Shown piece after piece: positions 14,036 through 16,215 of a stretch of DNA of 20,562 bases. Under the pieces are notes generated by a model that was not told where the DNA came from, ran no database searches, and saw only the letters and a list, made by a program, of their open reading frames with translations. The DNA lies in contig NW_021823873.1 in NCBI RefSeq assembly GCF_006345805.1, forward strand, positions 1-20,562, read 5' to 3'. This DNA comes from Octopus sinensis. Its lineage: Eukaryota. Each line of letters opens with the position of its first letter. Position 1 is the first letter of the stretch. A program made the translations under genes and the position numbers.

Positions 14036-14452
14036 CCGCAGGCGTGGGTCTGTTGCTAGAAGCTTGGCTCCCAAACAAATGGTTCTGGGTTCGGTCCCAC
14101 TGCGTGGCACCGAACCCAGAACCATTTGGGCAAGTGTTCTCTGCTAGAGTCCCAGAGCAATCAAAGCCTTGTGAGTGGATTTGGTAGACGGATACTGAAA
14201 GAAGCTCGTCATATATACATTTATATGTGTGCGTGTGTGTGCGTGTGTGCGTGTGTGTCTTTGCCTCCCCCCCACCATTGATTGACAACCGATGTTGGTG
14301 TGTTTATGACCATGAAACTTAGCGGTTCAGCAAAACATATCTATAGAATAAGTACTAGGCTTACAGAGAGTAAGTCCTGGGGTCGATTTGTTTGGCTAAA
14401 GGCGGTGCTCCAGCATGGCCGCAATCAAATGCCTGAAAAGAGTAAAAGTGTA
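14036..14452 (+). mobile_element. SINE family B, full length, with a templated insertion
   Basis: gcaggcgtggg...ggttcggtcccactgcgtggcacc...gccttgtgagtggatttggtagacgg...internal TG tract...ggcggtgctccagcatggccgcaatcaaatgcctgaaaagagtaaaag. Confidence 0.9.
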
Positions 14453-14457
14453 GATAA

Positions 14458-14480
14458 GCATATATCTGTGTATATAGATA

Positions 14481-14540
<60 letters not shown>

Positions 14541-14549
14541 TATATATAT
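14458..14549. repeat. (TA)n tract, left flank of the H2B-LINE unit
   Basis: Direct reading. Confidence 0.95.
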
Positions 14550-14571
14550 CATACCACCAATATATATCATC

Positions 14572-14949
14572 ATACCACCAGCACCAGCTACCGCTTCGAA
14601 AGGAGCCAAGAAGGCTTCGAAGGCCAAAGCTTCACGTCCCCCCGGAGACAAGAAGCGCAAGAAGAAGAGGAAGGAAAGTTATTCCATCTACATCTACAAA
14701 GTAATGAAACAAGTCCACCCCGACACTGGTATTTCCAGCAAAGCTATGTCCATCATGAACAGTTTCGTCAACGATTTGTTCGAAAGAATCGCTTCTGAAG
14801 CCAGCCGTTTGGCTCACTACAACAAACGTTCGACCATCAGTAGCTGTGAGGTGCAGACTGCTGTCCGTCTGCTTCCCCCTGGTGAGTTGGCCAAACACGC
14901 CGTCTCTGAAGGTACCAAGGCTGTCACCAAATACACCAGCAGCAAGTAA
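14572..14949 (+). pseudogene. H2B: Histone H2B retrocopy/pseudogene (start codon lost, frame otherwise intact)
   Basis: In frame from ATA at 14572 it reads (I)[124 protein letters not shown], an unmistakable H2B. Lesions: ATG>ATA; R>C at 14845-14847 (tgt, CpG-type change in SREVQT); L>P at 14875-14877 (RLLLPG>RLLPPG). Upstream is (TA)n, with no promoter and no H2A partner. Confidence 0.95.
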
Positions 14950-14991
14950 ATCTATTCTATTGTCAAATAGACTATTCGTCTATTTGACAAC

Positions 14992-15011
14992 GGCCCTTTT
15001 CAGGGCCATCA
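14992..15011 (+). promoter_or_regulatory. Replication-dependent histone mRNA 3' stem-loop
   Basis: aac-GGCCCT-TTTC-AGGGCC-atca: canonical 6-bp stem and 4-nt loop (SLBP site), 42 nt after the H2B stop codon, followed by ATCA (canonical ACCA). Confidence 0.95.
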
Positions 15012-15866
15012 AATGAAGACAAATTCGAACTGATTCACTTTGGAAGGGAGGACGCTCTGAAACTCCCATACTCTCTTCCTTCTGGAGAAATTCTCATGGC
15101 ATCCAACAACATCAGAGACTTGGGAGTAACAGTGGACAACAACGTAAGCTGGGCTACACATATAAGCAGCAAAGTTGACATGGCCCGCAGAATGTGTTCC
15201 TGGATTCTCAGAACCTTCCAGTCGAGAGATTCCCACGCTATTATCCTTCTCTTCTCCACTTTTGCCCGACTCCACCTTGAATACTGCTGTCCACTGTGGT
15301 CTCCCTACACAAAACAAAATATTATGAGAATTGAAGCTCCCCAAAGGTCAATCACAAAAAAGATAGATGCATGTCAGACCTTGACTACTGGGGTAGACTA
15401 GAGAAGCTGAAATGTATTCACTCCAACGACGACCGTGAACGCTACATTATCTGTATGATGTGAAAATATTCCATTAGCACTGTTCGAATGATGTTGGCAT
15501 CACCTTCAAAATACATCCAAGGCTTGGACCACGTGCCATCCGTCCACACAAAATCTAAATCGCATCACATAACGACAATACGGCACAACTATTTCACCTC
15601 AATAGGACCCGCTCTCTCAACATTACACCAGGACACGTCAAAAAAGAAACTGACCACACAACAAAATTCAAGAAGTCTTTGGACAAATTCCTTCAACAGT
15701 CCCGGACAAACCACCCACACCCGGATATGTCTCCGCAAACAATAACTCTCTGCTCGAATGGGCCTTGGTGCCCAAATCCTGAACTGAAAGACTTCGCCAG
15801 GTGTTGCTATTAAGTTAGACATGGCCTGGGCCAACTGGCCAAACCTTTCTAAGTTATTCTAAGTTA
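15012..15866 (+). mobile_element. 5'-truncated CR1-group LINE (C-terminal part of ORF2 plus 3' UTR and tail)
   Basis: Open frame from 15012: NEDKFELIHFG...IRDLGVTVDNNVSWATHISSKVDMARRMCSWILRTFQSRD...LEYCCPLWSPY...IEAPQRSITKKI. After frameshifts: MSDLDYWGRLEKLK, YSLQRR, IGPAL, KFKKSLDKFLQ, PGYVSANNNSLLEW. These are typical CR1/L2-group post-RT motifs. Ends in the tandem tail ttctaagtta x2 (15847-15866). Clade assigned from recalled motifs. Confidence 0.85.
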
Positions 15867-15882
15867 TATATATATAATATAT

Positions 15883-15924
<42 letters not shown>

Positions 15925-15955
15925 GTATGTATATATAATATATGTATGTATATAG
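15867..15955. repeat. (TA)n tract, right flank of the H2B-LINE unit
   Basis: Direct reading. Confidence 0.95.
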
Positions 15956-16139
15956 TTCAAATTTACAGAAAAAAAGACGAAGACAGGTGAGGGAAAGAAG
16001 CAGCTGTAATAGTTTGACGCTTGGGAAAAATAGAAAAGTTTTTGACGTCTCAAGCCTACGATCTTCGATAAAAAGGATAAACAGAAAAAAAAATGGAGAC
16101 CAATAAATAAACGGAGGCAGAAAAAATGAGAAGCGATTA

Positions 16140-16215
16140 ACGTTGTTTATGTCTGTGTGTGTATACATATATATAATTAAATAAAGAAATGCATATACGC
16201 AAAATATATATATTA

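What the first reader, a model, noticed from the sequence alone, without database searches (positions are those of the whole stretch)
14548..15866. Histone H2B mRNA fused at its processed 3' end to a CR1 LINE: a candidate template-switch retro-chimera
Seen: the H2B CDS, short 3' UTR and stem-loop (14992-15007) plus ATCA end at 15011. At 15012 LINE coding sequence begins mid-ORF (NEDKFELIHFG) and runs to a LINE tail at 15866. Both parts are in the same orientation. There is no poly(A) and no histone promoter. Established: replication-dependent histone mRNAs lack poly(A) and are cleaved 4-5 nt after the stem-loop (ACCA/ACCCA). U6/L1 chimeras arise when the LINE RT switches from its own RNA to the 3' end of another RNA. 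Inference: CR1 RT primed on its own tail, copied about 855 nt, then jumped to the mature 3' end of an H2B mRNA. CR1-group LINEs recognise their own 3' tails rather than poly(A), so this would be a way for such a genome to make retrocopies, including of non-polyadenylated mRNAs. I do not know of a description of this for histone mRNA and CR1 in cephalopods, but could not search.
Basis: partly seen in the sequence, partly recalled or inferred. Interest (0 to 1): 0.9.

Follow-up and report, generated by a model that had tools for sequence, protein, structure and literature searches.

The report
Histone H2B mRNA–LINE retro-chimera
An octopus-type genome holds one dead copy of a histone H2B messenger RNA joined, exactly at the RNA's natural trimmed end, to the last 855 bases of a young jumping gene (a LINE); the most likely cause is that the LINE's copying enzyme hopped from its own RNA onto the histone RNA. 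This process is known for mammalian L1, but I found no report of it for a histone mRNA.

Summary
Similarity to genomic H2B genes covers window 14568-15010 only. It starts 4 nt before the start codon (now ATA), with no TATA or CCAAT box. [quoted passage not shown]

From 15011 the sequence is the 3' 855 nt of an abundant, young LINE with a reverse transcriptase; its relatives also carry an AP-type endonuclease. The LINE is cut mid-RT and ends in its normal (TTCTAAGTTA)2 tail. There is no filler and no microhomology at the junction.

The family inserts into (TA)n. All 29 copies examined have TA-rich microsatellite after the tail (one has (ATCT)n), and 12 of 15 truncated copies have it at the 5' junction. 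Here (TA)n lies outside H2B and outside the tail, with none between, so the pair is one insertion unit. The two parts are equally diverged (1.9% and 1.3%).

The junction is unique in the genome. I read 40 of the 98 histone stem-loops and none of them adjoins this LINE, so this is a single event, not a shown pathway. One SINE-LINE junction looks analogous. The label "CR1" is plausible but was not tested by phylogeny. This is a new member of the known class of LINE template-switch chimeras.

The parts
14460..14547 (.). (TA)n microsatellite: 5' half of the target site
   Evidence: Sequence. 12 of 15 5'-truncated copies of this LINE family have (TA)n directly at their 5' junction.
14548..14568 (+). 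About 21 nt imperfect tandem duplication of the 5' junction. ATCATACCACCA occurs at 14548-14559 and again at 14569-14580.
   Evidence: Sequence. Both copies carry the ATG>ATA change, so the duplication arose at or after the insertion.
14568..14571 (+). Remnant of the H2B 5'UTR (CATC). Similarity to the parent genes starts here.
   Evidence: Alignment to L002-L007 and L018. The parental TATA box (41 nt upstream of ATG) and CCAAT box are absent.
14572..14949 (+). H2B coding sequence, now a pseudogene: start ATG>ATA, plus Arg>Cys (14845) and Leu>Pro (14876); stop codon at 14947-14949.
   Evidence: Pfam Histone E 1.7e-22. 96-98% identity to H2B genes of the C9:3.30-3.36 Mb cluster.
14950..14991 (+). 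H2B 3'UTR of the C9-cluster type, with a private 12-nt insertion (14959-14970). The insertion creates a perfect 13-bp inverted repeat: 14960-14972 pairs with 14978-14990.
   Evidence: Alignment. No genomic H2B gene carries the insertion.
14992..15010 (+). Histone stem-loop GGCCCTTTTCAGGGCC plus ATC. This is the end of the H2B-derived sequence (stem + 3 nt).
   Evidence: The parent genes continue ATCCA|TATTCTCTTGATTG; the window does not.
15011..15782 (+). LINE ORF2 3' portion, from the end of the RT domain (after FADD) through the C-terminal region. It is 5'-truncated at 15011 and decayed by frameshifts; the stop codon TGA is at 15780-15782.
   Evidence: 96-97% identity to more than 30 full-length matches among about 3,000 candidates. 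The family consensus continues upstream. Intact copies have an open frame for 500 aa upstream and 257 aa downstream of this point. Pfam RVT_1.
15783..15846 (+). LINE 3'UTR with predicted hairpins
   Evidence: fold z = -2.4 on the sequence of an intact copy.
15847..15866 (+). LINE terminal repeat (TTCTAAGTTA)x2: the normal 3' end of the family
   Evidence: The same tail, in 1-3 units, is seen in all 29 copies examined.
15867..15950 (.). (TA)n microsatellite: 3' half of the target site
   Evidence: 28 of 29 family copies are followed directly by (TA)n or TA-rich repeat, and one by (ATCT)n.

Best explanation
A single retrotransposition event of a (TA)n-targeting, tail-dependent LINE produced a two-part cDNA.

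Proposed steps:
1. The LINE endonuclease nicked a (TA)n tract.
2. The reverse transcriptase primed on the 3' tail of its own RNA and copied 855 nt.
3. It then jumped end-to-end onto the 3' terminus of a mature, 3'hExo-trimmed H2B mRNA (stem-loop + 3 nt). The mRNA came from the C9:3.3 Mb histone cluster.
4. It copied that mRNA almost to its cap.
5. The cDNA was joined to the upstream (TA)n.

The product was dead on arrival (no promoter) and has since decayed.

Shown here: the exact boundaries, the single-unit architecture, the truncated LINE, the equal ages and the uniqueness of the junction. Inferred: the order of events, and that the joining was done by RT template jumping.
For: - **H2B boundaries.** H2B similarity is limited to 14568-15010. 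The promoter and downstream processing region are absent, and the end lies at stem + 3 nt.
- **Truncated LINE.** LINE similarity begins at 15011, while the family consensus continues upstream. Truncation points in other copies vary.
- **Clean junction.** There is no filler and no microhomology.
- **Normal LINE 3' end.** The LINE ends in the family's normal tail.
- **One insertion unit.** The family targets (TA)n: 28 of 29 3' flanks and 12 of 15 5' junctions are TA repeat, against 7% (TA)n coverage of the window. Here (TA)n lies 5' of H2B and 3' of the tail, with none at the internal junction.
- **Equal divergence.** H2B differs at 8/431 positions (1.86%) and the LINE at 11/851 (1.29%); Fisher p = 0.47.
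- **No source locus.** The junction is unique in the 2.72-Gb assembly.
- **A second candidate.** In L058 a tRNA-SINE stops 3 nt short of its consensus 3' end and is joined directly to an internal LINE position. The pair is bracketed by (TA)n, while other copies of that SINE have non-TA flanks.
Against: - There is only one histone case. I read 40 of the 98 exact histone stem-loops, including every isolated one, and none of those is next to this LINE or a related ORF2. The other 58 lie in histone clusters. Of these I read only the downstream flanks of H2B genes held as L002-L030; the rest were not read.
- Target-site duplications cannot be defined inside a microsatellite.
- The transcription start of the parent gene is not known, so "near full length" is an estimate from the TATA position.
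- The 12-nt palindromic insertion and the 21-nt 5' duplication are not explained by the simple model.
- Sequence alone cannot separate RT template jumping from RNA-RNA joining before reverse transcription.
- There is no read-level validation of the assembly at the junction.
Confidence: 0.7

Rival explanations
1. RNA-level joining before reverse transcription. The H2B mRNA 3' end was ligated (or trans-spliced) to a fragment of LINE RNA. The hybrid RNA was then copied in one pass by the LINE machinery through the LINE tail. This is the mechanism proposed for U6/L1 chimeras via RtcB (my recollection of Moldovan et al. 2019; not read here).
For: It gives the same architecture: a clean junction without microhomology, the natural RNA 3' end and one insertion unit.
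Against: Ligation by RtcB needs a 2',3'-cyclic phosphate, as on U6. Histone mRNA ends made by CPSF73 cleavage and 3'hExo trimming carry 3'-OH (established knowledge; trimming is described in PMC9745837). No splice-site motifs are present at the junction.
Confidence: 0.1
2. Two steps through a lost source locus (5' transduction). A truncated LINE first inserted just after the stem-loop of an H2B gene. A read-through H2B-LINE transcript was then retrotransposed through the LINE tail into this (TA)n tract.
For: The parent sequence after the stem is ATCCATATTC, which contains a short TA-like stretch. Most copies of the family are 5'-truncated.
Against: No locus with this junction exists elsewhere in the assembly. 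None of the H2B genes or stem-loops I read carries a LINE. It needs two events, plus an insertion that happens to fall exactly at the position of the mature mRNA end.
Confidence: 0.08
3. Independent events at DNA level. A pre-existing H2B fragment and a separate LINE insertion, or a deletion or rearrangement, happen to abut.
For: (TA)n tracts are common here: 7% of the window. One other copy (L064) abuts a different repeat without intervening (TA)n.
Against: Both H2B boundaries coincide with mRNA ends. No known route makes a promoter-less, poly(A)-less H2B copy on its own. There is no (TA)n between the two parts, although the LINE targets (TA)n. The two parts are equally diverged.
Confidence: 0.06
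4. Assembly or library artefact (chimeric read or contig).
For: The window lies at the start of contig C344 of a 13,516-contig assembly. The contig's length was not reported, and C344 gave no hit outside the window. The assembly shows many single-base indels in repeats.
Against: An artefactual join of genomic DNA would keep the promoter or downstream sequence. Both parts carry private substitutions (8 and 11) and private indels, as expected for an aged genomic insertion. The junction lies at a biologically meaningful nucleotide.
Confidence: 0.03

Closest known systems
U6/L1 and other bipartite LINE-1 chimeric retrocopies of mammals (template switching during target-primed reverse transcription)
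   Same: A cellular RNA copy ending at its own 3' end forms the 5' part. A 5'-truncated LINE in the same orientation, with its normal 3' end, forms the 3' part. The pair is one insertion unit and there is no promoter. L1 chimeras with U6, other non-coding RNAs and mRNAs are catalogued in the PMC13174262 abstract. U6 pseudogenes are covered in PMC4476161, which was listed but not read.
   Different: - The LINE here depends on its own tail and targets (TA)n, with no poly(A).
- The partner is a replication-dependent histone mRNA, which has no poly(A).
- The host is a cephalopod.
- Only one case was found, whereas L1 chimeras are numerous.
- PMC13174262 mentions histones only as chromatin marks.
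Template jumping of non-LTR reverse transcriptases in vitro (R2 of Bombyx; my own knowledge of Bibillo & Eickbush 2002/2004, not read here)
   Same: An end-to-end jump from the 5' end of one RNA template to the 3' end of another without sequence identity, matching the filler-free, homology-free junction.
   Different: R2 belongs to a different clade, carries a restriction-like endonuclease and is rDNA-specific. No biochemistry exists for the family found here.
Origin model of tRNA-SINEs that carry LINE 3' tails, and the scarcity of retrogenes in CR1-dominated genomes
   Same: LINEs that recognise their own RNA limit which cellular RNAs can be retrotransposed (PMC5470649). From the titles and abstracts listed: SINE 3' ends derive from LINEs (PMC3747384) and stringent LINEs recognise their own 3' tail RNA (PMC4176376). 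A cellular RNA can therefore be mobilised once, or repeatedly, only if it is fused upstream of the LINE tail, which is the arrangement seen here.
   Different: The chimera here has no internal promoter and was not amplified; the junction is unique. It is a dead end, not a new SINE.
LTR-mediated chimeric retrocopies in non-mammals (PMC5131818, abstract listed; mechanism as described in PMC5470649)
   Same: A retrocopy formed by RT template switching and flanked by retroelement sequence.
   Different: Those are flanked by LTR sequence on both sides and rely on microsimilarity. Here there is a single LINE 3' part, no LTR and no microhomology.

Membership tests
LINE template-switch bipartite chimera (U6/L1 type) | The 5' part is a copy of a cellular RNA that ends at that RNA's authentic 3' terminus | tested here: met
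   H2B identity ends at stem-loop + 3 nt. The parent genes continue with different sequence. This position is the major cytoplasmic 3' end in mammals.
LINE template-switch bipartite chimera (U6/L1 type) | The 3' part is a 5'-truncated LINE, in the same orientation, ending in the family's normal 3' terminus | tested here: met
LINE template-switch bipartite chimera (U6/L1 type) | The 5' part lacks the promoter and downstream genomic sequence (RNA origin) | tested here: met
   TATA and CCAAT boxes and the post-cleavage sequence are absent. Introns are uninformative because histone genes have none.
LINE template-switch bipartite chimera (U6/L1 type) | One set of target-site hallmarks brackets the whole unit and none lies at the internal junction | tested here: inconclusive
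   The family's (TA)n target lies on both outer sides and not between the parts. A discrete target-site duplication cannot be defined within a microsatellite.
LINE template-switch bipartite chimera (U6/L1 type) | Recurrence: independent chimeras of the same LINE family with different truncation points | tested here: inconclusive
   No second histone case was found in the 40 of 98 stem-loops read, which include all the isolated ones. There is one SINE-LINE candidate, L058. Flanks of U6 copies could not be read.
Replication-dependent histone mRNA 3' end (Rfam RF00032) | A 6-bp stem and 4-nt loop with an A-rich 5' flank and an AC-rich 3' flank | tested here: met
   Exact GGCCCTTTTCAGGGCC. The Rfam score of 32.8 bits is just below the gathering score of 34, and the model's 3' flank positions fall on LINE sequence here.
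CR1-clade LINE | ORF2 with an AP-type endonuclease and a reverse transcriptase | tested here: inconclusive
   RVT_1 is present in family copies. Homologues at 43-56% identity carry PF14529/PF03372 plus RVT_1 in proteins of about 1,000 aa. The N-terminal part of this family itself was not retrieved.
CR1-clade LINE | A 3' end made of a hairpin plus a few copies of a short (8-10 nt) direct repeat, without poly(A) | tested here: met
   (TTCTAAGTTA) in 1-3 units. Predicted hairpins in the 3'UTR, z = -2.4. L2 and some other clades share this feature.
CR1-clade LINE | Phylogenetic placement of the RT within the CR1 clade | not tested
   No reference RT set was available. Recently active octopus LINEs are reported as RTE, Dong-R4, CR1 and L1-Tx1 (PMC13282606). 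The roughly 290-aa region after FADD argues against RTE, and the AP-type endonuclease of the homologues argues against Dong-R4; both arguments draw on my own knowledge of these clades.
Classical processed pseudogene (L1/poly(A) type) | A 3' poly(A) tract directly after the mRNA copy, flanked by target-site duplications | tested here: not met
   There is no poly(A); the H2B copy is followed directly by LINE sequence.

The most novel reading that the evidence does not exclude
This (TA)n-targeting LINE family may regularly jump from its own RNA onto the 3' ends of non-polyadenylated cellular RNAs such as histone mRNAs and SINE or small RNAs. That would give cephalopod genomes, whose active LINEs largely depend on their own tails, a general route to retrocopies and new SINEs. 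Such junctions would also preserve natural snapshots of mature RNA 3' ends; here they would show that 3'hExo-type trimming of histone mRNA to stem + 3 nt is conserved in molluscs.
Probability: 0.2. Interest if true: 0.6.

Novelty: new member of a known kind. Interest (0 to 1): 0.42.

Why it matters
LINEs that recognise their own 3' tail are thought to make almost no gene retrocopies. A chimera in which the LINE tail supplies the initiation signal and an mRNA is picked up by template jumping shows how that restriction can be bypassed, even for an mRNA with no poly(A).

The junction also records, at single-nucleotide resolution, the 3' end of an octopus histone mRNA. That end is stem-loop + 3 nt, the same as the trimmed cytoplasmic form in mammals.

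As it stands this is one decayed locus with no sign of function or amplification. It is a well-resolved example, not a new principle.

Tried and rejected
- **Other copies of the junction.** I searched the whole genome with a probe spanning the junction. Only the window matched across it.
- **Other histone-LINE fusions.** All 98 exact histone stem-loops were listed. The 40 I fetched and read include every isolated one plus some from clusters. None is near this LINE or a related ORF2. The other 58 lie in histone clusters. Of these I read only the downstream flanks of H2B genes held as L002-L030; the rest were not read.
- **Other H2B fragments.** L036 and L070 are truncated DNA-level pseudogene pieces without a LINE. 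L038 and L039 are divergent H2B genes.
- **L069 as a second chimera: rejected.** The LINE there sits in the (ATCT)n tail of another LINE family.
- **L064 as a chimera: ambiguous.** The neighbour is a roughly 195-nt repeat that usually abuts (TA)n, and it is truncated at the junction.
- **H2A, H3 and H4 scans by hit range.** No hit spans exactly 5'UTR to stem + 3. A few isolated partial H3 and H4 copies remain unexamined.
- **Rfam on the whole window at gathering threshold.** Nothing was found.
- **Literature.** Six searches and five papers checked by term look-up gave no description of a histone mRNA-LINE chimera. The library lacks most subscription journals, so absence is not proof.
- **Clade assignment of the LINE.** No reference set was available.

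Full report
**Setting.** The window is G000:C344:1-20562 of a 2.72-Gb assembly in 13,516 contigs. The nearest named relative of its LINE protein comes from the octopod Argonauta hians, so the genome is cephalopod and octopus-like.

**Observation.** The sequence is as described.
- An H2B reading frame runs 14572-14949 and matches Pfam Histone at E 1.7e-22.
- A 42-nt 3'UTR follows, then the canonical histone hairpin GGCCCTTTTCAGGGCC at 14992-15007. Rfam Histone3 scores 32.8 bits, E 4e-8, against a gathering score of 34.
- LINE coding sequence (NEDKFELIHFG...) follows, running to a (TTCTAAGTTA)2 tail that ends at 15866.
- (TA)n microsatellite lies immediately 5' of the H2B part and immediately 3' of the tail.

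**H2B boundaries.**
- A whole-genome DNA search found about 35 H2B genes in clusters. Only the genes at C9:3.30-3.36 Mb (L002-L004, and more distantly L005) share the window's 3'UTR.
- With 1.5 kb of flank on each side, similarity to these genes covers window 14568-15010 and nothing else.
- At the 5' end the match begins at CATC, 4 nt before the start codon, which is ATA in the window. The parental TATA box lies 41 nt upstream of ATG. It is absent, as is the CCAAT box, and (TA)n stands in their place. From the TATA position the transcription start should lie roughly 8-12 nt upstream of ATG, so the copy is near full length.
- At the 3' end the window reads GGCC-ATC|AAATGAAGAC, while the parents read GGCC-ATCCA|TATTCTCTTGATTG.

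**LINE boundary.**
- Twenty-nine other copies of the LINE read ...AACATGTTGCT|AAATGAAGACAAATTC. All three A's at the junction therefore belong to the LINE, and the H2B-derived part ends at 15010, exactly 3 nt after the stem. There is no filler and no microhomology: the next parental base is C and the preceding LINE base is T.
[quoted passage not shown] More than 80-90% of cytoplasmic molecules then end 3 nt after it (PMC9745837). The junction thus sits at the expected end of a mature, trimmed mRNA.

**The LINE family.**
- The 855-nt part is 96-97% identical to more than 30 copies that match it over its full length, out of about 3,000 first-look candidates.
- Two copies (L051, L066) keep an open frame for at least 500 codons upstream and 257 codons downstream of the junction point. 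A stop, an 84-nt 3'UTR with predicted hairpins (z = -2.4) and 2-3 units of TTCTAAGTTA follow.
- The protein has RVT_1. Homologues at 43-56% identity are proteins of about 1,000 aa with an AP-type endonuclease (PF14529/PF03372) plus RVT_1.
- This fits a CR1/L2/Jockey-group LINE that depends on its own tail. The clade was not resolved because no reference set was available. CR1, RTE, Dong-R4 and L1-Tx1 are the recently active LINE groups reported for Octopus vulgaris (PMC13282606).

**Target preference and unit structure.**
- In 28 of 29 copies the tail is followed directly by (TA)n or TA-rich repeat. In the remaining copy it is followed by (ATCT)n.
- Of 15 copies truncated within the sampled 1.5 kb, 12 have (TA)n directly at the 5' junction. 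Truncation points are scattered.
- (TA)n of five or more units covers 7% of the window. The family therefore inserts into (TA)n.
- In the window, (TA)n brackets H2B plus LINE and is absent between them. This is what a single insertion unit predicts.

**Ages.**
- The LINE part differs from the majority sequence of the 29 copies at 11 of 851 aligned positions (1.29%), with 11 indel events. The copies range from 0 to 1.9%.
- The H2B part differs from L002-L004 at 8 of 431 positions (1.86%), plus one 12-nt insertion.
- The two rates do not differ (Fisher p = 0.47).
- The sample of LINE copies is biased toward well-conserved ones, and the assembly shows many single-base indels. The frameshifts are therefore weak evidence of age.

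**Generality.**
- The junction probe matches only the window across the join.
- The pattern GGYCCTTTTMAGGRCCA has 98 hits, against 2 for the reversed control. The 40 loci I fetched include every isolated hit plus some from clusters. None shows this LINE or a related ORF2 by blastn or tblastn.
- Range-based scans with H2A, H4 and H3 genes plus flanks found no copy spanning exactly 5'UTR to stem + 3. They did list a few isolated partial H3 and H4 copies whose flanks I could not read.
- Among the three truncated LINE copies without (TA)n at the 5' junction:
  - L069 is a plain insertion into another LINE's (ATCT)n tail.
  - L064 is ambiguous.
  - L058 is a good analogue. A tRNA-SINE stops 3 nt short of its consensus end (…CGGAGTGCTCC) and is joined directly to LINE position 735. 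(TA)n(TG)n lies upstream of the SINE and (TA)n downstream of the LINE. Other copies of that SINE have unrelated flanks.

**Mechanism.**
- The best explanation is target-primed reverse transcription started on the LINE's own tail at a (TA)n nick. It was followed by an end-to-end template jump to the 3' end of a mature H2B mRNA and completion near its 5' end.
- This is the U6/L1-type mechanism, here with a tail-dependent LINE and a non-polyadenylated mRNA.
- RNA ligation before reverse transcription gives the same product and cannot be excluded. It is less natural for a 3'-OH histone end.
- A read-through transcript from a lost H2B-LINE source locus needs two events and a coincident insertion point, and no such locus exists in the assembly.
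- Independent adjacent events or an assembly artefact do not explain boundaries that coincide with mRNA ends, or the equal private divergence of both parts.

**Unexplained details.**
- The 3'UTR carries a private 12-nt insertion (14959-14970) that is the reverse complement of the adjacent downstream sequence. It makes a perfect 13-bp hairpin (14960-14972 with 14978-14990).
- The 5' junction is tandemly duplicated over about 21 nt, and both copies carry the ATA change.
- Either feature could date from the insertion event or from later replication slippage.

**Known or new.**
- LINE template-switch chimeras are well known. [quoted passage not shown] The idea that CR1-type LINEs recognise their own RNA, which limits which cellular RNAs they can retrotranspose, is described in PMC5470649.
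- I found no report of a histone mRNA as the captured partner, or of such chimeras in cephalopods. The searchable library is incomplete.
- I rate this a new member of a known kind: a real, cleanly resolved, single event.

Noticed in passing
window 14959-14990: A private 12-nt insertion in the H2B 3'UTR is the reverse complement of the neighbouring sequence. It creates a perfect 13-bp inverted repeat (TTGTCAAATAGAC/GTCTATTTGACAA) just upstream of the histone stem-loop. It is absent from all genomic H2B genes found. It looks like a templated (snap-back) insertion.
   Followed up: partly
window 14548-14580: An imperfect 21-nt tandem duplication at the 5' junction: ATCATACCACCA appears twice, separated by TA repeat. 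Both copies carry the ATG>ATA change.
   Followed up: partly
L041-L069 (29 LINE copies across G000): This young LINE family (0-1.9% from its majority sequence) is specific for TA-type microsatellites. 28 of 29 copies have (TA)n after the tail, 1 of 29 has (ATCT)n, and 12 of 15 truncated copies have (TA)n at the 5' junction.
   Followed up: yes
L058 (G000:C2:113936211-113937654 region), junction at locus position 738/739: A tRNA-derived SINE, stopping 3 nt short of its consensus 3' end, is joined directly to an internal position of the same LINE family. The pair is bracketed by (TA)n. This is a likely second template-switch chimera.
   Followed up: partly
L077 (G000:C5:27690497 region): A roughly 60-nt piece of an H2B 3'UTR with its stem-loop and about 15 nt of downstream sequence, preceded by about 13 nt of unrelated sequence. 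The whole is flanked by an 11-bp direct repeat, AAAACAGACAT. It is not LINE-associated and looks like a templated filler insertion.
   Followed up: no
L071, L078, L079, L089 and L073, L076, L080, L083, L084: Two interspersed repeat families, sharing about 950 bp and about 700 bp respectively, each contain an exact histone-type hairpin GGCCCTTTTCAGGGCC followed by ACTTTACAT, and further CCTTTTCAGGG-like motifs nearby. No histone coding sequence is adjacent.
   Followed up: partly
G000:C2:14613839-14614315; C10:84720432-84720835; C17:2700658-2700942; C4:152534458 and 152544458: Isolated partial H3 and H4 copies without promoter similarity. The C2 H3 copy (96% identity, stops 8 nt before the stem-loop) has a 37-nt inverted piece of its own 5' end next to it. 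These are possible further histone retrocopies; their flanks could not be read.
   Followed up: no
window 15955-16140; L064 locus positions 1240-1412: A repeat of about 195 nt with at least 383 candidates in the genome. It typically starts right after a (TA)n tract and lies just beyond the chimera's 3' (TA)n in the window. It may be another (TA)n-targeting retroelement in the opposite orientation.
   Followed up: partly
window 14037-14456: A repeat with an inverted-repeat segment, upstream of the chimera. Copies at 75-78% identity lie near H2B clusters (L011, L016).
   Followed up: no
G000:C1:141926002-141953129: A tandem array of at least 25 U6 snRNA genes spaced about 1.1-1.4 kb apart, plus about 24 dispersed U6 copies elsewhere.
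   Followed up: no
L118-L124: A second LINE family (about 1,900 candidates) ends in ...AATAAAAGAAAGTTATCT followed by (ATCT)n in 6 of 7 copies. The first family can insert into this tail (L069).
   Followed up: partly
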